Position numbers and translations under genes: made by a program
Source of the DNA: Octopus bimaculoides
Taxonomy: Eukaryota
NCBI RefSeq assembly: GCF_001194135.2
Contig: NC_068983.1
Location: forward strand, 153,761,352-153,813,802
Length of the DNA: 52,451 nt
Direction: 5' to 3'
Shown: positions 14,481 through 47,840 of the stretch, piece by piece
Position numbering within the stretch: the stretch's first letter is position 1
Layout: the number at the start of each line of letters is the position of its first letter
The notes under the pieces: generated by a model
The model's input: the letters and a program-made list of their open reading frames with translations, nothing else
What the model was told of the DNA's origin: nothing
Databases searched by the model: none

Positions 14481-15564
14481 ACGACACAGCGTAAATCAAA
14501 ACTGAAATTAGGCTGAATAACGTGGGTTAATTATGTAAATGCGAATGCCACTGTATGCCTCTGTGTAAGTGTGAGTGCGAGTTTGACGAGTGTGTGTACG
14601 AGTGTGTATGCGAGTGTGTGTGTGTGCGCGTGAAGCCTCATTAGTTGAAGACTACGAAATATAACATGGTAAGATGAAGAGTTATGAGTGGGTAGAAAGT
14701 AGATTATTGTAGAAAGTATATGAACTGTCAACAGCACAGCGGAACGACTATTATTGTATTGCAAAAAGCAAAAGAAACGGAGATAGTATGCTTATAAGCC
14801 AGAATTTAGATCGTATCTACACCTGCAATTACGAAACAAGTCGGGTGGTGTTTTTCTTTTTTTTTTTTGGTTGTCAGTCTAGAATGAAATTGTGCGACGC
14901 TGTCGCGTCGTTCCATATATTCTAATTTCTTGACAGGTTTGAGTTTTGTTTCGTCAGCAATGTTAGCGGGGCTCAACAATTTTAGTGAGAAGCCAGTCTT
15001 TGGGATGTTGCCTTAAATATCTTCAGGATGTGTGTGCTTTAATTAGTAGAGATTGCTTGTTAGGTGGAATCCAAAACAGGATGGGGCGGTGAATGTTTTC
15101 GGTTATTGATGTCGTGTGCAATAATTGATGCAATTAGACTCTTTAGAATATGTAAGCCTTACATTTTTCTTTTTCTCTTTTTTTCTGTTTTTTCTTATTG
15201 TCTTTATTTATTTATTTATTCTCTCACTGTAATAGCATATGGGACTGTGATGATCCATATTGGAGGTATTTAAGGGTTACCGTCTTCAACTCGGTGCAGA
15301 TTTGGCATATGATATCCAACGATTTATTACACAGAGAGAAAGATTATATGTGTCTATACAAAACGTTCTGAATTAAAAGAAGAAGAAAAAAAAAAGATTA
15401 ATAGTTATCGCCAAGCCAACATGGCAGTCCCAAAATTAGGACGAAAGCTGCCGTGAATTGGCTCCAAGAAGCCATCGCCTCTAGCTAGCTATGTGACACA
15501 CGAAACCTGTGTCCTTTATAACCTTCGAACAGGGGAGGTCAGCAGCTTCCCCCTGCTGGTTTGG

Positions 15565-15615
15565 CATCTGCAGACTAGACTAGTTTCAGGGTGTTGCCCT
15601 TTGTCAATGCAGAGC
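15565..15615 (-). ncRNA. Minimal type I hammerhead ribozyme, U3-A8 core variant
   Basis: Minus strand reads GCUCUGCA-UUGACAA-AGGG caaca CCCU-GAAA-CUAG u CUAG-UC^UGCAGAUGC. Stem I has 6 bp plus 2 bp, stem II is 4 bp and perfect, GAAA is present, stem III is self-complementary, and the GUC triplet predicts cleavage between 15573 and 15572. Confidence 0.82.
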
Positions 15616-15850
15616 AGCCAAGCTCCAGCCAGGCGGCGCTACTGACTGTGTCTGTTCGAAGGTTATTTATCTAAGTTCAGTAGAATCTATCCACTGGTTT
15701 TCAGAAATAGAGTTATTAATATTTCTAAGTCTCCCTAAAGGAGACTACGGCAGCGGTACTGGAAATTAATAGTTATCGCCAAGCCAACATGGCAGTCCCA
15801 AAATTAGGACGAAAGCTGCCGAGAATTAGCTCCAAGAAGCCATCGCCTCT

Positions 15851-15902
15851 GCTCTGCATTGACAAGGGGCAACACACTGAAACTAGTCTAGTCTGCATAT
15901 GC
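15851..15902 (+). ncRNA. Second copy of the same hammerhead with weakened stems I and II
   Basis: GCUCUGCA-UUGACAA-GGGG caaca CACU-GAAA-CUAGUCUAG-UC^UGCAUAUGC. The core is intact, with a G-A mismatch in stem II and a C-U mismatch in stem I. Predicted cut after 15893. Confidence 0.7.
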
Positions 15903-16969
15903 CAAACCAGCAGGGGGAAGCTGCTGACCTCCCCTGTTCGAAGGTTATAAAGGACACAGGTTTCGTGTGTCACATAGCTAGCTAGAAGCGATGGCTTCTT
16001 GGAGCTAATTCACGGCAGCTTTCGTCCTAATTTTGGGACTGCCATGTTGGCTTGGCGATAACTATTAATTTCCAGTGCCACTGCCGTAGTCTCCTTTAGA
16101 GAGACTTAGAAATATTAATAACTCTATTTCTGAAAACCAGTGGATAGATTCCACTGAAATTAGATAAATAACCTTCGAACAGACANNNNNNNNNNNNNNN
16201 NNNNNNNNNNNNNNNNNNNNNNNNNNNNNNNNNNNNNNNNNNNNNNNNNNNNNNNNNNNNNNNNNNNNNNNNNNNNNNNNNNNNNNNNNNNNNNNNNNNN
16301 NNNNNNNNNNNNNNNNNNNNNNNNNNNNNNNNNNNNNNNNNNNNNNNNNNNNNNNNNNNNNNNNNNNNNNNNNNNNNNNNNNNNNNNNNNNNNNNNNNNN
16401 NNNNNNNNNNNNNNNNNNNNNNNNNNNNNNNNNNNNNNNNNNNNNNNNNNNNNNNNNNNNNNNNNNNNNNNNNNNNNNNNNNNNNNNNNNNNNNNNNNNN
16501 NNNNNNNNNNNNNNNNNNNNNNNNNNNNNNNNNNNNNNNNNNNNNNNNNNNNNNNNNNNNNNNNNNNNNNNNNNNNNNNNNNNNNNNNNNNNNNNNNNNN
16601 NNNNNNNNNNNNNNNNNNNNNNNNNNNNNNNNNNNNNNNNNNNNNNNNNNNNNNNNNNNNNNNNNNNNNNNNNNNNNNNNNNNNNNNNNNNNNNNNNNNN
16701 NNNNNNNNNNNNNNNNTATATATATATATATATATATAATGTATGTATGTATGAATGTATATGTAGATGTATGTTAATATCACTTTCTAGATATAAATAT
16801 CATATATATATATATATACAAATATATACATATATATATGTATATATACGTCTATATATAAACATATATATGTATATATACGTCTATATATGTATATATA
16901 TATAGATAGATAAATAAATAGAGATAGATATATACATAAATAAATAAATATATATATATTTAAATGTAC

Positions 16970-17005
<36 letters not shown>

Positions 17006-18805: not shown

Positions 18806-19826
18806 CACAGGTGTTGGACAAGATAATAGAAACAGCTAGTATCATAATTTTGAAATATCTATAAAACCGTCAAAAGCTTGTTTATTTTTATGTTTTATTG
18901 ATTTATTATTAGTGCTGCTTAATATGTTTTGCTAAAACTTTCAGATAGGGACCATTGGACTCTTAAGTGAATTGTTAGAAAGGATCGGAAAAGTACAGCT
19001 CCCAAAATTATTGCAGAGCTTAAAGACCACCTCGAGAAACCAGTTTCCACAAAAACTGTTCGCCGCGAGCTGCACAAAGTCGGATTTCATGGGAGGGCTA
19101 AAATTAGAAAACCACTACTTTCAAAAATAAACGTTGTAAACCGTTTAGAGTGGAGTAAAAAAAAATACAGAATTGATCCCTAGAGCAGTGGAAGGACGTT
19201 ATTTTCTCGGATGAGTAATCCTTTACCTTATTTCCGACCACCGGCCGAGTATACGTGTGGAGACAGCCAAAAGAAGCATTTGACCCCGAGTGCCTTCTTC
19301 CAACTGTTAAACATGAAGGAAGATCTGTGATGATCTGGAGGGGGGGGCTATGTCTTGAAAAGCCGCTGGCCCAATGGTTTCCCTTCATAGCGGAATTAAT
19401 AGTCAAGACTATTTAAGCATTTTATCTCATCAAATTCATCCCATTCTTGCGGAACTTTTATGGAGGGTAAACGTAATCTTTCAGGATGATAATGCACCAA
19501 TTCACACAGCTAAAGTTGTTACTGAATGGCACGAGGAACATTCTAGTGAAGGTGAACATTTTACCTGGCCACCACAGTCCTTAGAACTCAATATTATCAA
19601 ACATTTATAGCAAAGTTTAGTAAAACAAGTAAGGAGTCGATATCTTCCACTATCATCACTACAAGAACTGGAGACCGTTTTAGCTTAAGAATGGACAAAA
19701 ATTCCTTTGGAAACAATTCAAACTTTCTACGAGTCCATAGCTCACGGAGTTCAAGCTGGAATTACTGCTAAAAAAGAATTCGTATGAAATTTTGAGGTGT
19801 TTCCATTATTTTGTCCAACCACTGTG
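18806..19826 (+). mobile_element. Tc1-family DNA transposon, internally deleted and decayed, with TIRs and D-36-(E) spacing
   Basis: TIRs cacaggtgttggacaagataatagaaaca and tgtttccattattttgtccaaccactgtg, with TA on the right. Transposase pieces: VSTKTVRRELHKVGFHGR..RKPLL, WKDVIFSDE, TGRVYVWR, PTVKHEGRSVMIW, FQDDNAPIHTAKVV...WPPQSLELNIIKHL. Confidence 0.9.
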
Positions 19827-19892
19827 TATATATGCAGCATGCGAGAGTTATTTGAGGACAGACTTGGTAATTTAATATAACAATTGTAGAAA

Positions 19893-20113
19893 TATTAATA
19901 CGTGTAAGTCTCTCTAAAGGAGACTACGGCAGCGGTACGCGGTACTGGATATTAATAGTTATCGTCAAGCTAACATGGTAGTCCAGAAAAATAGAACGAA
20001 TGCTGCCGTTGATTAGCTCAAAGAGGCCGTCGCCTCTCGCTAGCTATGTGACACACGAACCTGTATCCATTATAACCTTCGAAAAGGGGAGGTTATCCGC
20101 TTCCCTTGCTGGT
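19893..20113 (-). mobile_element. Diverged partial copy of the 368-bp hammerhead repeat, truncated shortly before the ribozyme
   Basis: aagtctctctaaaggagactacggcagcggtac...attaatagttatcg..aagc.aacatgg...gctagctatgtgacacacgaa.cctgt..cc.ttataaccttcgaa.aggggagg matches 15727-15850 and 15482-15560. Confidence 0.85.
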
Positions 20114-20200
20114 CTTAGGTAAATAATCCTTTGAACATACTCCAGGAGCTCCAACAAAACCTGTGGTAAAGAGAAAATATTATTGTTGTCGTTGTTGTTT

Positions 20201-26230: not shown

Positions 26231-26936
26231 CCAACAATAATTGATTAACAAGATTAATGATTGATATAACTCAGTCAGACGGCAAAATGAGTGGAATGAG
26301 GGATGAATACACTAGTTATGATGAAATATCTCCAGTGATACGCGATCGAATGTGTAAGCTAAATGATGCTTTCGAAAGAGAAGTTTAATTTCATTACATT
26401 TTCGTATATATATATATATATTCGTATATAGAAATCTCCAGGGATACTTTTACCAGCGGACAAAACAAGTAGCATTTACATTGTTGATATATAGTTATAT
26501 CAGTCCATGATTAGGAAGGAATTGCACAGCAAATATAGACACGCTAGTAACAACATATTGAAAATAATTAATTATATAGCTAATACCGTGATAATATTTT
26601 CAGACATCTGCTTCAGTAAACCTATCAGTATTGTACTTATAATGACTACTGGAAACCGCTGGAAGCCAAATCTACTCTAATATAGAAAAATATGTAATGA
26701 CCATTATTTGTACCTTGTCTTATATATCGCTGTGTGAAAACTGGAGCCCATCCTTGAATTTACCATAAAGATTTGTGATAAACCATAACCTTGGACCCTG
26801 GCATAAGAGTACTTGGAGTTCTTCACTAATCTAAACAATATTGTTAGCTCGGTATACTAACAGAGATTATGAACTATTTTGCACGGATTGATATCTCTCA
26901 CTACTAGCTATATAGTCTGTTAAAGTCTGTCATACC

Positions 26937-26976
26937 GGCCATGACGAAGGGAAATAGCCCTGAAACTCGAGTCGCC
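26937..26976 (+). ncRNA. Hammerhead-like motif (minimal type I) with one extra base in the 5' core
   Basis: GGC-C(A)UGACGA-AGGG aaauag CCCU-GAAA-C UCGA G-UC^GCC. Stem II is perfect, ACUCGAGU is a perfect palindrome, the triplet is GUC, and stem I is 3 bp. Predicted cut after 26973. Confidence 0.55.
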
Positions 26977-27979
26977 TTTATATATTTATATTTATATATT
27001 TGATCCTTTATATTGAACACTCAATATTTCATCTACAGTCAATACTTTATTTCATGGTGCCATCCATTTTTATTTTATTTTATATTATATATTGTATATT
27101 ATATTATATATTCTATATTCCATATTCTATACCCCACATTGGTTCTGCAGGAATATAAATAAAACATAAAAAACAGACAGTGTTGGAACTCTTTTAAACA
27201 AAATAATATATTCCTCTATACANNNNNNNNNNNNNNNNNNNNNNNNNNNNNNNNNNNNNNNNNNNNNNNNNNNNNNNNNNNNNNNNNNNNNNNNNNNNNN
27301 NNNNNNNNNNNNNNNNNNNNNNNNNNNNNNNNNNNNNNNNNNNNNNNNNNNNNNNNNNNNNNNNNNNNNNNNNNNNNNNNNNNNNNNNNNNNNNNNNNNN
27401 NNNNNNNNNNNNNNNNNNNNNNNNNNNNNNNNNNNNNNNNNNNNNNNNNNNNNNNNNNNNNNNNNNNNNNNNNNNNNNNNNNNNNNNNNNNNNNNNNNNN
27501 NNNNNNNNNNNNNNNNNNNNNNNNNNNNNNNNNNNNNNNNNNNNNNNNNNNNNNNNNNNNNNNNNNNNGAGAGATATCCATTTCTATCACCTTTTCGATA
27601 TGTCACCAATCTACGGCATTGAAACAGCTAGATGTGAACTCAGAATTTTCACTCATTTAACAATATTTCGAAACTTACAAGAGTCGTATACTGAAATCCC
27701 TGCTATCTTTCTTATTGGACAGAAAATAACGAATGTCTCTTATACTTCAGACACATTATAAAGAAAAGAAAGAAACAAACCAAAAAAAAAAAAATGGATA
27801 GCAGCCATCTTTCTTTAATTACCACATTTGACCCGGCACCTGCAAACATTTTTTTTGTCTTGTTTGCAAACATTTTATTAGTTTATATCCCGTGATAGGA
27901 ATATTTCAGACAGCAATACCACTACAGCAAACCATCTGCACATAAAATTGCATCGATTCATCCAAATATAGAAACAAAA

Positions 27980-28105
27980 TCATTATCATTTTATTATTTT
28001 TATTATTTTTATTGACATCAACATCGTCTTCATCATCATCATAATCGTCACCATCATAATCATCATCAACATCATATTCCTCATCGCTATCGGTAGTAGT
28101 AGTAT

Positions 28106-28171
<66 letters not shown>

Positions 28172-28456
28172 TAGTCGCACAATCGTAGCAATTTTCACAA
28201 TCATCACGATCAAAAAGATTTTTTGTTGTTTTTATTAAACATCAAATTCGTCATCATCGTCGTCGTCGTCATGAGTATCATCATCATCATCATCACCATC
28301 GCCGTCGCTGACGTCATCGTCGTCGGCGTCGTCGTCGTCTTCGTCGTCGTCTTCGTCGTCGTCTTCGTCGTCGTCGCTAACATCGTAATCCGCATCATCA
28401 TCATCCTCATCATCATCATCATCTTCGTCGTCGTCCTCGTTGTCGTCGTCCTCATC

Positions 28457-28488
<32 letters not shown>

Positions 28489-28667
28489 CTTTATCATTAA
28501 TGCTTCACTACCATATCGATTTTTAATACAGTTGTCAAAACTAATATAAAAACAAACAGAAACTCAGTATTACACAATGCACAAACAAGTAGTAGTAGTA
28601 GTAGTAGTAGGAGGAGGAGGAGGAGGAGGAGGAGGAACAGCAGCAGCACTGGCAGTAGTAGTAGCAG

Positions 28668-28698
<31 letters not shown>

Positions 28699-28960
28699 GC
28701 TGCTGCTGCTGGTAGAAGTAGTAGTAATAGTAGTAGTAGTGGTGGTGGTGGTGGAGGCGGTGGTGGTGGCGGTGGTCTTGGTGGTAGTAGTGGCGGCGGC
28801 GAGGGTAGCAGCAGCAGGAGCAGTAGTATTAGTTGTAATAGTAGTAGTAGTAGCAGAAGCAGCAGCAGCAGTAGTAGTAGTAGTAGTAGTAACAGCAACA
28901 CCAGCACTTATGAACATTGTGATGATGATGATGATGATGATAACGATGACGACGACGATC
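27980..28960. repeat. ~1-kb mosaic of trinucleotide repeats (CAT, AGT, CGT, GGA, GCA, ACT, GGT, GAT)
   Basis: Direct reading. Source of the poly-L, poly-P, poly-T and poly-V pseudo-ORFs. Confidence 0.95.
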
Positions 28961-45047: not shown

Positions 45048-46790
45048 CAAACACACACACATTACTTTTAATACCCATATTGTTCTTCTGGGTGACTACG
45101 TACGTATATATGTTTCTTTATCGGCCACACAGGGCTGAACACAAAGGGGACAAAATACAAAGTAGAGCTTTTCTTTTTNNNNNNNNNNNNNNNNNNNNNN
45201 NNNNNNNNNNNNNNNNNNNNNNNNNNNNNNNNNNNNNNNNNNNNNNNNNNNNNNNNNNNNNNNNNNNNNNNNNNNNNNNNNNNNNNNNNNNNNNNNNNNN
45301 NNNNNNNNNNNNNNNNNNNNNNNNNNNNNNNNNNNNNNNNNNNNNNNNNNNNNNNNNNNNNNNNNNNNNNNNNNNNNNNNNNNNNNNNNNNNNNNNNNNN
45401 NNNNNNNNNNNNNNNNNNNNNNNNNNNNNNNNNNNNNNNNNNNNNNNNNNNNNNNNNNNNNNNNNNNNNNNNNNNNNNNNNNNNNNNNNNNNNNNNNNNN
45501 NNNNNNNNNNNNNNNNNNNNNNNNNNNNNNNNNNNNNNNNNNNNNNNNNNNNNNNNNNNNNNNNNNNNNNNNNNNNNNNNNNNNNNNNNNNNNNNNNNNN
45601 NNNNNNNNNNNNNNNNNNNNNNNNNNNNNNNNNNNNNNNNNNNNNNNNNNNNNNNNNNNNNNNNNNNNNNNNNNNNNNNNNNNNNNNNNNNNNNNNNNNN
45701 NNNNNNNNNNNNNNNNNNNNNNNNNNNNNNNNNNNNNNNNNNNNNNNNNNNNNNNNNNNNNNNNNNNNNNNNNNNNNNNNNNNNNNNNNNNNNNNNNNNN
45801 NNNNNNNNNNNNNNNNNNNNNNNNNNNNNNNNNNNNNNNNNNNNNNNNNNNNNNNNNNNNNNNNNNNNNNNNNNNNNNNNNNNNNNNNNNNNNNNNNNNN
45901 NNNNNNNNNNNNNNNNNNNNNNNNNNNNNNNNNNNNNNNNNNNNNNNNNNNNNNNNNNNNNNNNNNNNNNNNNNNNNNTGCTGCTTCCTCCCCTGCTACT
46001 ACAACCAATTAACTACTGCTGCTTACACGGACAGAGTTTACTCCCGTTTACCATTACCAACACTGTCACTACTACTACTTCAGCGAACGATTCAAGCCAA
46101 CGCTCTAGACAGCCATTATGTACCCGCATAAAAAACGCTCCCACGTGGACTATGTTGACACCAGTAAGAAACAATTACACATTTTTTAAAATATGTATTT
46201 TTGATAAGGTTCGTTTTATCAAGAACCGAAACATGTTAAAAATTTCTCTGACAAAATTATACATTAAAATTCAATTTTTATATATTGGCGTTTTCAAACT
46301 TCTTTTTTATAAATATATATTCATATATACACATACATATATATATATATAAGTATGTATGTGCATGTATGCATGCATGTATGTACGTATGTATGTATGA
46401 ATATTGTTTCTACGTACACAGCGAGTGCGTTATTGTGTTTGTAGTATCAAGCCAGTATTATTACACATATTGTATATAAGGGCGAAGGTTCCTTCCTGGC
46501 GCTCCAGCAGTTTATTTCTGGTTAAAGAACTGAGATCTGTTCTAAGTAAACTAGAAAAACACAGATTTCACTGCACAGAGTTTTTGTATATTTGCTGCAT
46601 TCCTGCAACTGAAATGGCTGTATCTATTACACTCAGCCTTTGAAGTCATCTACACTTCATATCATATTTTATATATAGATATATATATATGAATAACTAG
46701 ATTCATACATACGTAGACACATATATGTATGTATATACATAGGCACACAAACACACATACATATATGAACACACACATTGAGACATATAT

Positions 46791-46830
<40 letters not shown>

Positions 46831-46842
46831 NNNNNNNNNNAC

Positions 46843-47840
46843 TGTTTCATCCTCTGGAATGAAAGTATAGAAAAGCTCAACGAATTCCAAGCACTTCTAA
46901 ATGGATTAAACGAAAACCTACAATTTACGATGGAATACAACAATCAACAACTACCGTTTTTAGATATGCTCATAAAGAAAGTCGGAAACAAGATAGAGAC
47001 AGACGTCTATTATAAATCCACTGACTCGAAACAGTACCTACCATTTGATTCTTGCCACCCGAGACACACCAGGACTAATATCCCATTTTGTTTAGCCAAA
47101 AGAATATGCACTATAGTATCAGATGCAGACACCCGTTATACACGACTCCAGGAATTGAAATCCACACTCGTAAATAGAAACTATCCACAGCCCTTAATCG
47201 AAAATACGATCCAAAGAGTACTTCAATTAAATACAAAAGAACTTAGACAACCAAGACCCAAGAAGGAAGAAAAATTAAAAACCCTGTCTTACATCTCCAC
47301 ACACAACCCACACAACAATGAGGCCTTCAACAACATACTCCACAGCACAGCTCTACTCAAGAAAGACCCAAAAATGAACCGAATCCTCAATACACATACA
47401 ATCATCAAAAGTAAGAGGCAACCAAAATCAATGAAAAATATTTTAACCCAGGCCAAATTACACTCAACTATAACCACTAAATCTACAGTAAAAAAATGCG
47501 GGAAACCCAACTGTAGGATTTTTTTCAACGTAATAGAAGGATCAGAACATCGATTAGAACAAGGCCATAATTTCACAATAAAAACTAATTTTAAATGTGC
47601 ATCGGAGAACTTGATCTACCTAATTACATGCTCTGAATGCAAACGGCAATATATTGGACACACTAAAAACAGCCTATGTCAGAGGATGGCGGTACAGAAA
47701 TCCCAAATTAGGATCCCATAAAACAGGAAAATACCTCTCAGCCAGCACATCGACCAATGTGCTTACAACAAATTTCCCAAATTCACAACGTTTCCTGTAT
47801 ACAAATTCAAAAACAATGCTAGCCAAAATGAACGCATTAG
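46843..47840 (+). mobile_element. Penelope-like element: RT thumb, Cys-linker and GIY-YIG endonuclease (Neptune-type architecture); 5' end lost in a gap
   Basis: Open ~290 aa from DCFILWN (just after the YIDD motif): QFTME..LPFLDM, YYKSTDSKQYLPFDSCHP, RLQELK, KCGKPNCRI linker, NLIYLITCSECKRQYIGHT (GIY..YIG), then SQHI after a premature stop at 47719-47721. Confidence 0.92.

What the first reader, a model, noticed from the sequence alone, without database searches (positions are those of the whole stretch)
15397..16185. 368-bp tandem unit with one hammerhead per unit: candidate cephalopod retrozyme / circRNA system
Seen: period of exactly 368 bp (15397 vs 15765) and no coding potential. The ribozyme-sense unit is packed with helices: CAGCAG/CUGCUG (15908-15926), a 15-bp long-range pair CUGUUCGAAGGUUAU/AUAACCUUCGAACAG (~15934 vs ~16168), GACAC/GUGUC, GGCAG..GUCC/GGAC.UGCC, AGUCUC/GAGACU and CAGUGGA/UCCACUG. 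Established: non-LTR retrozymes in other metazoans are tandem repeats of a few hundred bp with one type I hammerhead per unit, processed to small circRNAs and thought to be copied by PLE reverse transcriptases. Inference: this is such a system. I do not recall one described from cephalopods, but cannot confirm novelty.
Basis: partly seen in the sequence, partly recalled or inferred. Interest (0 to 1): 0.9.

Follow-up and report, generated by a model that had tools for sequence, protein, structure and literature searches.

The report
Octopod hammerhead retrozyme-like repeat, variant core
A 368-bp non-coding repeat in an octopus-type genome carries a self-cleaving "hammerhead" RNA motif with an unusual but documented core variant, and looks like a new cephalopod member of the known family of small ribozyme-bearing retroelements; activity and RNA circles remain untested.

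Summary
The 368-bp period is real, but the locus is not a plain tandem. It holds 1.23 direct units (15397-15850), then an inverted copy of at least 0.91 unit (15851-16185) joined head-to-head, then an N-gap. A third, 87%-identical fragment lies at 19887-20120.

Rfam finds no hammerhead, even at E<=10. A hand-built descriptor finds one type I hammerhead per unit (minus strand 15613-15567; plus strand 15853-15899):
- helix I of 6 bp and helix II of 4 bp;
- a near-palindromic helix III;
- cleavage at GUC^U;
- the core pair C3-G8 replaced by U3-A8.

None of 3000 shuffles gives this motif. U3-A8 is a published variant in Penelope-element hammerheads. The same core recurs in a Penelope fragment in this window, in its Octopus vulgaris relative, and in an unrelated head-to-head element in O. 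bimaculoides, with covarying helices. The 368-nt monomer folds far better than shuffles (z = -7.9).

Best reading: a non-autonomous, Penelope-dependent retrozyme-type element, inserted in the partial-tandem-plus-inverted-copy pattern typical of Penelope elements.

Not shown: self-cleavage, circular RNA, a real multimer array, or genome copy number. I could reach no outside copies.

Verdict: a new member of a known kind, of moderate interest.

The parts
15397..15764 (-). One complete 368-bp unit (left arm). The hammerhead-sense strand is the minus strand. 47% GC, non-coding.
15765..15850 (-). The first 86 bp of a second direct unit, 98% identical to 15397-15482. It gives the head-to-tail junction at 15764/15765. 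The left arm is therefore 1.23 units in total.
   Evidence: (D1)
15567..15613 (-). Hammerhead copy A (intact fold): UCUGCA-UUGACAA-AGGG CAACA CCCU-GAAA-CUAGUCUAG-UC^UGCAGA. It is type I, with helix I of 6 bp, helix II of 4 bp, and a U3-A8 core. The predicted cleavage site lies between 15573 and 15572.
   Evidence: 77 bits against own model
15518..15670 (-). Long imperfect closing stem of the monomer. Sense positions 1-55 (15572-15518) pair with positions 271-334 (15670-15607). Its base is hammerhead helix I, and it contains the perfect 15-nt pair ATAACCTTCGAACAG / CTGTTCGAAGGTTAT.
   Evidence: (I3, I5)
15849..15850 (.). Head-to-head inversion junction, a 2-nt overlap shared by both arms. The 5' ends (in hammerhead sense) of the left and right arms meet here.
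   Evidence: (I1, I2)
15851..16185 (+). Right arm: an inverted copy with its sense on the plus strand, covering sense positions 326-368 then 1-292. It is 96-98% identical to the left unit and includes a second head-to-tail junction at 16069/16070. It runs into the assembly gap.
15853..15899 (+). Hammerhead copy B (decayed). It has one mismatch in helix I (G to U) and one in helix II (C to A). The hammerhead fold scores -2.6 kcal/mol against -9.9 for copy A. The predicted cleavage site is 15893|15894.
16186..16716 (.). Assembly gap of 531 N. It hides the continuation and the right boundary of the right arm. A (TA)n microsatellite follows at 16717-16985.
19887..20120 (-). Diverged partial copy C, 87% identical, covering sense positions about 7/13 to 233. 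It spans the same head-to-tail junction and lacks the hammerhead. Its 5' end lies about 6 nt downstream of the predicted cleavage site.
46195..46243 (+). Minimal hammerhead of the Penelope-like element, also with a U3-A8 core: UUGAUAA-GGUUC...GAACC-GAAA-CAUGU-U. The helix III strand ACAUGU is palindromic. The segment 46132-46329 is homologous to the 3' region of an O. vulgaris PLE copy.
46841..47809 (+). Fragment of a Penelope-like element ORF (C-terminal RT region, HTH and GIY-YIG). It is a candidate for the kind of autonomous partner, not shown to be the actual one.

Best explanation
The 368-bp unit is a non-autonomous retroelement of the metazoan non-LTR retrozyme type, meaning a short non-coding sequence that depends on Penelope-like elements (PLEs). 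It sits in an octopod genome.

Shown here:
- Each unit encodes, on one strand, a type I hammerhead. Helix I of that hammerhead is the base of a closing stem of about 55 bp that shuts a compact, multi-hairpin 368-nt RNA.
- The catalytic core carries the documented U3-A8 covariation in place of C3-G8.
- Helix III is too weak to form as a hairpin but forms a stable self-duplex. If the ribozyme is active, it should therefore cleave as a dimer in multimeric transcripts, as the newt, axolotl and PLE hammerheads do.

Inferred mechanism:
1. Multimeric transcripts cleave themselves at GUC^U into 368-nt monomers.
2. A host RtcB-type ligase circularises the monomers.
3. A PLE reverse transcriptase with its GIY-YIG endonuclease copies and inserts them.

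How the locus fits: the left arm (1.23 units) joined head-to-head to an inverted, 5'-truncated copy beside a microsatellite is the published insertion signature of PLE machinery. As assembled, this locus is a partly decayed insertion, with one intact and one damaged ribozyme. It is not a demonstrated source of circles.
For: - The motif is not chance. All three helices are in type I topology, 0 of 3000 shuffles give it, and it is the only hit in the window.
- The U3-A8 core is a published natural covariation in PLE hammerheads. That paper also describes helix I of 6 bp, helix II of 4 bp, and a short palindromic helix III (PMC4209133).
- The helix III hairpin scores 0 kcal/mol against -10.9 for the self-duplex.
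- The same U3-A8 core occurs in the PLE fragment of this window, in its O. vulgaris homologue, and in an unrelated head-to-head element in O. bimaculoides. Helices I and II covary and loop 2 (CAACA/CAACAA) is conserved.
- My own covariance model recovers the O. bimaculoides copy at 27 bits. On the resulting alignment 94% of cells are paired, 6 pairs change on both sides, and 0 of 500 shuffles reach the covariation score.
- The monomer fold has z = -7.9 linear and -7.75 circular.
- The head-to-tail junction is present in three copies, including the 87%-identical copy C.
- The unit matches the published retrozyme description: 368 bp, 47% GC, non-coding, against 150-450 bp and below 50% GC, with mussel repeats of 350-390 bp (PMC7229834).
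- A partial tandem plus an inverted 5'-truncated copy, with a bias for microsatellites, is described for PLEs (PMC8557442).
- The octopod origin and the PLE ORF are supported.
Against: - No Rfam hammerhead model matches, even at E<=10.
- C3 and G8 are catalytically important positions. PLE-type hammerheads showed low activity in vitro (PMC4209133), so activity is uncertain.
- Only one intact hammerhead is visible, and there are never two in the same orientation.
- Among the window's copies there are no compensatory changes. Substitution rates are equal at paired positions (17/140) and unpaired positions (11/79).
- No copy was found outside the window: in three collections scanned by exact pattern, in six octopod loci totalling 127 kb, or through ORF-based searches.
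- The unit has no sequence similarity to the PLE fragment in the window apart from the core type.
- The inverted junction lies in a short-read scaffold beside a gap.
Confidence: 0.65

Rival explanations
1. The unit is not a separate non-autonomous family. It is the hammerhead-bearing 3'-terminal (pLTR) part of an autonomous Penelope-like element, seen here as heavily 5'-truncated insertions.
For: - PLE hammerheads sit in pLTRs, and PLE insertions are often 5'-truncated, partially tandem, and paired with inverted copies.
- The O. bimaculoides element in L002 is an inverted pair of arms of about 240 nt with no tandem junction.
- A 2026 preprint argues that animal retrozymes derive from pLTRs.
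Against: - The same 368-to-1 junction recurs in three copies of different ages, including copy C at 87% identity. Independent truncations would give different junctions.
- No RT or endonuclease coding sequence adjoins any copy.
- The unit shows no similarity to the PLE copies in the window or in six octopod PLE loci.
Confidence: 0.15
2. The head-to-head inverted arrangement is an assembly artefact. The true locus would be a plain, longer tandem array that collapsed or was mis-joined beside the gap.
For: - The contig ends inside the repeat at a 531-N gap.
- The window is a short-read scaffold with 12 N-runs.
- Repeats of this kind commonly break assemblies.
Against: - The arms differ by 2-4%, so they are distinct copies and not a fold-back of one read.
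- The same head-to-head architecture occurs for another hammerhead element in a chromosome-level O. bimaculoides assembly.
- The architecture is the published PLE insertion pattern.
Confidence: 0.2
3. It is an ordinary local duplication or satellite, and its hammerhead-like motif is a coincidence or a long-dead relic with no RNA-level role.
For: - Rfam finds nothing.
- The core is non-canonical.
- There is no covariation among the window's copies, and no outside copies were found.
Against: - 0 of 3000 shuffles give the motif.
- Hammerheads of identical architecture, with covarying helices, occur in two other octopod element families.
- The fold z-score is -7.9, and helix I is integrated into the closing stem.
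- A dispersed older copy shows that the unit has moved.
Confidence: 0.05

Closest known systems
Metazoan non-LTR retrozymes (Cervera & de la Pena 2020, PMC7229834), especially the 350-390-bp repeats of the mussel Mytilus galloprovincialis
   Same: - A short non-coding unit of similar size (368 bp), with GC below 50%.
- One type I hammerhead per unit.
- Head-to-tail junctions.
- A highly structured monomer in which helix I closes the molecule.
- Co-occurrence with Penelope-like elements.
- The host is also a mollusc.
   Different: - The core is U3-A8, not C3-G8.
- No multimer array is visible: 1.23 units plus an inverted copy.
- Helix III is of the dimer type, whereas most invertebrate retrozyme hammerheads cleave efficiently.
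- Expression and circularity are untested.
- The host is a cephalopod, for which I found no report.
Minimal hammerheads in the pLTRs of Penelope-like elements, including the U3-A8 variant of Schistosoma mansoni Cercyon (Cervera & de la Pena 2014, PMC4209133)
   Same: - The U3-A8 core covariation.
- A palindromic helix III, implying action as a dimer.
- Association with PLEs.
- Motifs found in opposite strands 100-700 bp apart.
   Different: - Here helices I (6 bp, extended) and III (4 bp plus loop) are full-sized, as in canonical type I motifs, and not minimal.
- The motif sits in a 368-bp repeating unit with no PLE ORF attached.
Newt satellite 2 and axolotl retrozyme hammerheads
   Same: - Type I hammerheads in tandem repeats of about 330-350 bp.
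- A weak helix III that requires two ribozymes to pair (dimeric cleavage).
   Different: - Those are vertebrate elements with a canonical C3-G8 core, and their transcripts and cleavage have been shown experimentally.
Plant LTR retrozymes
   Same: - Non-autonomous and ribozyme-bearing, with circRNA intermediates proposed.
   Different: - Plant elements have type III hammerheads inside LTRs, a PBS and PPT, GC above 55% and a size of about 700 nt. None of these applies here.

Membership tests
Metazoan non-LTR retrozyme | Type I hammerhead topology: helix I open, helices II and III closed, cleavage after UH | tested here: met
   Helix I 6 bp, helix II 4 bp, helix III 4 bp plus a 3-nt loop, and GUC^U. 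0 of 3000 shuffles give the motif.
Metazoan non-LTR retrozyme | Conserved catalytic core (CUGANGA ... GAAA) able to self-cleave | tested here: inconclusive
   U4, G5, A6, A9, G12, A13, A14, A15.1, U16.1 and C17 are canonical. C3 and G8 are replaced by U3 and A8, a covariation published for PLE hammerheads. Catalysis cannot be tested here.
Metazoan non-LTR retrozyme | Tandem repeats of 150-450 bp, from dimers to multimers | tested here: inconclusive
   The unit is 368 bp, and head-to-tail junctions occur at 15764/5, at 16069/70 and in copy C. Only 1.23 units are seen in one orientation and at least 0.91 in the other. The gap hides the rest, and TRF finds no array.
Metazoan non-LTR retrozyme | Low GC (below 50%), no coding capacity, no LTR/PBS/PPT | tested here: met
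   GC is 47%. The longest ORF is 50 aa with no homologues. There are no terminal repeats other than the unit itself.
Metazoan non-LTR retrozyme | [quoted passage not shown] | not testable with these tools
   No transcriptome access. The only indirect evidence is a strong fold (z = -7.9) and copy C starting about 6 nt from the predicted cleavage site.
Metazoan non-LTR retrozyme | Many copies in the genome, and co-occurrence with Penelope-like elements | tested here: inconclusive
   Co-occurrence is met: a PLE fragment with a U3-A8 hammerhead lies in the same window. Copy number is unknown: three copies in the window and none in 127 kb of other octopod DNA.
Penelope-like element (autonomous) | A single ORF with RT and GIY-YIG endonuclease between pLTRs | tested here: not met
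   There is no such ORF at or next to 15397-16185 or 19887-20120. The PLE ORF fragment lies 30 kb away and is unrelated in sequence.
Penelope-like element (insertion signature) | A partial tandem plus an adjacent inverted 5'-truncated copy, with a bias for microsatellites | tested here: met
   The left arm of 1.23 units is joined head-to-head at 15849/50 to the inverted arm, and (TA)n follows the gap. The pattern is as described in PMC8557442 and recurs in L002.
Rfam hammerhead families (Hammerhead_1, _3, _II, HH9, HH10) | Score at or above the gathering threshold of the covariance model | tested here: not met
   There is no match at the gathering threshold, nor at E<=10 on 886 nt or on 86 nt.

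The most novel reading that the evidence does not exclude
Octopods, and perhaps cephalopods generally, carry a hidden population of hammerhead ribozymes whose core has switched to U3-A8. The switch would span both their Penelope-like elements and derived 368-nt retrozymes. Standard tools (Rfam models, canonical CUGANGA descriptors) would miss them, and the elements would be transcribed, cleave as dimers, and accumulate as small circular RNAs in cephalopod tissues. In about 180 kb of octopod DNA, every motif that passed a descriptor allowing any Watson-Crick 3-8 pair had U-A. One marginal extra motif has G8.
Probability: 0.35. Interest if true: 0.55.

Novelty: new member of a known kind. Interest (0 to 1): 0.42.

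Why it matters
If confirmed, this would extend ribozyme-bearing circRNA retroelements to cephalopods.

It would also show that a whole lineage of hammerheads with the U3-A8 core is invisible to Rfam-based annotation. Ribozyme and retrozyme censuses in molluscs would then be undercounts.

It also offers a natural test case for the C3-G8 tertiary pair. The same core swap appears in an autonomous element and in its presumed parasites.

Beyond that it is an expected kind of element. Retrozymes in molluscs, U3-A8 variants, and the Penelope link are all already published.

Tried and rejected
- Rfam at the gathering threshold on the window, and at E<=10 on 886 nt and 86 nt, gave no hammerhead or any other ribozyme on either strand. 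I do not take this as absence, because the models penalise U3/A8.
- Tandem Repeats Finder reported no 368-bp array. The inversion explains this.
- A strict or one-mismatch CUGANGA scan found nothing.
- Attempts to reach outside copies all failed:
  - exact look-ups of ORFs in and near the repeat;
  - protein homology with the 50-aa ORF and with a six-frame pseudo-protein of the unit;
  - exact-pattern scans of metagenome contigs (twice), viral contigs, and prokaryotic genome contigs;
  - BLASTN of the unit against six octopod loci.
- A covariation test on the unit's non-hammerhead helices, using the window's own copies, found no double changes, with about half of the single changes breaking pairs. 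This is uninformative for decaying genomic copies.
- A MITE-like reading, based on the 42-55-nt inverted repeat, was rejected. The hammerhead core lies outside the repeat arms, and the unit recurs head-to-tail.
- A SINE, tRNA or snoRNA origin is not supported. The only Rfam hits are chance-level, at E of 1.4 or higher.
- The first GUC (GAAACUAGUC^UAGUC) was rejected as the cleavage site, because helix I then does not pair. The second GUC gives 6 bp.
- A MAFFT alignment of the six hammerheads was out of structural register. I replaced it with an explicit helix-by-helix comparison and a model-based alignment.
Full report
**1. What is in the sequence**

The unit 15397-15764 is 368 bp, with 47% GC against 35% for the window.
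- Its first 86 nt recur exactly 368 bp downstream (15765-15850, 98% identity).
- The direct repeat stops there. 15849-16069 is the reverse complement of unit positions 1-221 (98%), and 16070-16185 is the reverse complement of positions 253-368 (96%).
- The sequence then runs into a 531-N gap at 16186-16716.
- The finding's span is therefore 1.23 direct units joined head-to-head to at least 0.91 of an inverted unit. It is not about 2.1 tandem units, which is why Tandem Repeats Finder lists no 368-bp array.
- Each arm contains a head-to-tail junction, at 15764/5 and at 16069/70.
- A third, older fragment at about 19887-20120 is 87% identical and spans the same junction. The 368-bp circular or tandem permutation is therefore a property of the family, not a local accident.
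- The arms differ by 2-4%, so they are distinct copies.
- No ORF inside the unit exceeds 50 aa. Neither that ORF nor a six-frame pseudo-protein of the unit has any homologue among 5.8 billion proteins.

**2. The hammerhead**

Rfam gives nothing, at the gathering threshold or at E<=10 on 886 nt or on 86 nt. A strict CUGANGA scan also finds nothing.

- Copy A is on the minus strand at 15613-15567.
- Copy B is on the plus strand at 15853-15899.
- The sequence is UCUGCA-UUGACAA-AGGG CAACA CCCU-GAAA-CUA GUC UAG-UC^UGCAGA.
- This is a complete type I hammerhead.
- Positions 3 and 8 are U and A instead of C and G.

Significance and the literature on this core:
- With a descriptor that allows any Watson-Crick pair at positions 3 and 8, 0 of 3000 dinucleotide shuffles of the unit give a hit. 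Copy A is the only hit on either strand of the 52-kb window.
- C3 and G8 pair with each other in the active fold (PMC3884650).
- Cervera & de la Pena 2014 report exactly the U3-A8 covariation in Penelope-element hammerheads of Schistosoma, with about 1,300 hits. They also describe metazoan type I motifs as having helix I of 6 bp, helix II of 4 bp, and a short palindromic helix III that forces action as a dimer (PMC4209133).
- Here the helix III strand ACUAGUCUAGU does not fold alone (0 kcal/mol) but forms a self-duplex of -10.9 kcal/mol.

Copy B has one mismatch in helix I and one in helix II. Its hammerhead fold scores -2.6 kcal/mol against -9.9 for copy A, so it is probably impaired.

**3. 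The rest of the RNA**

The monomer delimited by the predicted cleavage site folds at -150.4 kcal/mol. Shuffles give -104.0 +/- 5.9.
- The z-score is -7.9 for the linear sense strand, -7.75 for the circular form, and -6.4 for the antisense strand. None of 300 shuffles is as stable.
- Hammerhead helix I is the base of an imperfect closing stem of about 55 bp (sense positions 1-55 with 271-334).
- The window's copies give no covariation support for these helices. There are no double changes, and copy C has 17 substitutions in 140 paired positions against 11 in 79 unpaired. This is what neutral decay of inserted copies predicts, so it argues neither way.

**4. Organism and relatives**

At 46841-47809 there is an ORF fragment whose relatives carry RVT_1, HTH_animal and GIY-YIG domains.
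- Its best named hits are Octopus vulgaris (74% identity), Argonauta hians and O. bimaculoides. The window is therefore octopod, and the ORF belongs to a Penelope-like element.
- I fetched six octopod loci through these proteins. None contains the 368-bp unit.

Hammerheads of the same kind do occur in these loci:
- **(a) The Penelope element itself.** Window 46195-46243 reads UUGAUAA-GGUUC...GAACC-GAAA-CAUGU-U. The same motif lies about 660 bp after the ORF in the O. vulgaris copy. The segment 46132-46329 is 74% identical to L001 11644-11842.
- **(b) An unrelated O. bimaculoides element.** L002 3097-3143 reads AUCUGA-UUGACAA-GAGU CAACAA ACUC-GAAA-CAUCGAUG-UC^UCAGAU. It sits in one arm of a head-to-head inverted pair next to (TA)n.

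Across these families:
- Helices I and II differ in sequence but stay paired.
- The U3-A8 box, GAAAC, loop 2 (CAACA or CAACAA) and the palindromic helix III strand are conserved.
- A covariance model built only from the two window copies recovers the O. bimaculoides motif at 27 bits (E about 2e-4). On the resulting alignment 94% of cells are paired, six pairs change on both sides, and 0 of 500 shuffles reach the covariation score. That alignment is fitted to the model, and the sample is small.
- With any Watson-Crick pair allowed at positions 3 and 8, all motifs found in about 180 kb of octopod DNA had U-A.
- One further marginal motif, at 26935-26978, has G8 and an irregular 5' box.

**5. Mechanism**

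Shown:
- A hammerhead-shaped motif with a documented variant core.
- A dimer-type helix III.
- A highly structured 368-nt unit, with head-to-tail junctions in three copies.
- A head-to-head arrangement of the two arms.
- A Penelope element nearby with the same core type.

Inferred from the retrozyme and PLE literature (PMC7229834; PMC8557442; the 2026 preprint):
1. Multimeric transcripts self-cleave at GUC^U.
2. The monomers are circularised by an RtcB-type ligase.
3. They are then copied and inserted by a Penelope RT and endonuclease.

Craig et al. describe the partial tandem plus an adjacent inverted 5'-truncated copy next to a microsatellite as typical of PLE insertions. That architecture is seen both here and in L002.

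Two weak hints fit a ribozyme-processed or circular template:
- Copy C begins about 6 nt from the predicted cleavage site. The chance of this is roughly 3.5%.
- The 3' ends of the insertions differ: sense position 176 in the left arm against about 233 in copy C.

As assembled, this locus never shows two same-orientation hammerheads. It cannot be shown to release monomers and is best seen as a decaying insertion.

**6. Rivals**

- **Truncated pLTR of an autonomous PLE (0.15).** The recurrent junction and the absence of any adjoining ORF or sequence similarity count against this.
- **Misassembled inversion (0.2).** This concerns only the architecture. The divergence between the arms and the same pattern in a chromosome-level assembly count against it.
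- **Coincidental or dead motif in an ordinary repeat (0.05).** The shuffles and the cross-family covariation count against it.

**7. Novelty and score**

- Retrozymes in molluscs (mussel repeats of 350-390 bp), the U3-A8 variant, and the Penelope link are all published.
- I found no paper reporting hammerheads or retrozymes in cephalopods, but the library is limited to open-access text.
- This is a new member of a known kind. Its useful twist is that its core makes it, and apparently other octopod hammerheads, invisible to Rfam.
- Interest is 0.42. Confidence in the main reading is 0.65.

Noticed in passing
window 46132-46329 and 46841-47809 (+): A Penelope-like element fragment (C-terminal RT region, HTH and GIY-YIG), preceded by a pLTR-like segment. 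That segment carries a minimal hammerhead with a U3-A8 core (46195-46243). Both parts are homologous to one O. vulgaris PLE copy, at 76% and 74% identity.
   Followed up: yes
L002 2723-3293 (O. bimaculoides CM046614.1): A head-to-head inverted pair of arms of about 240 nt (94-95% complementary, 93-nt spacer) next to (TA)n. Each arm carries a U3-A8 type I hammerhead: the right arm's is intact, and the left arm's has decayed to UCGACAA. The pair lies within the span of a RING-finger gene call. Apart from the ribozyme it is unrelated in sequence to the 368-bp unit.
   Followed up: partly
window 26935-26978 (+): A hammerhead-like motif found by my own covariance model (19 bits, E about 0.035): CCGGC-CAUGACGA-AGGG AAAUAG CCCU-GAAAC-UCGAG-UC^GCC. 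Its helix III strand ACUCGAGU is a perfect palindrome, and it directly abuts a TA-rich microsatellite. The core is irregular and helix I has only 3 bp. It is probably a solo PLE-type ribozyme relic.
   Followed up: partly
window ~19374-19838 (+): A Tc1/mariner-type transposase remnant, with a weak DDE_3 match, in-frame stops and an ITR-like end (...CCACTGTGTA). It lies 50 bp upstream of the diverged retrozyme-like copy C.
   Followed up: partly
window 19887-20120 (-): Copy C begins about 6 nt downstream of the predicted ribozyme cleavage site and lacks the hammerhead. Its junction carries a 7-nt duplication (GGTACGC). The 3' ends of the insertions differ between copies.
   Followed up: partly
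whole window: The window has twelve N-runs (10-898 N) and 84 tandem-repeat rows. These include long trinucleotide arrays at 2089-2579 and about 28000-28900, and (TG)n, (TA)n and (CT)n tracts. It is a short-read scaffold of a microsatellite-rich genome. No tRNA or other Rfam family reaches threshold anywhere in it.
   Followed up: no
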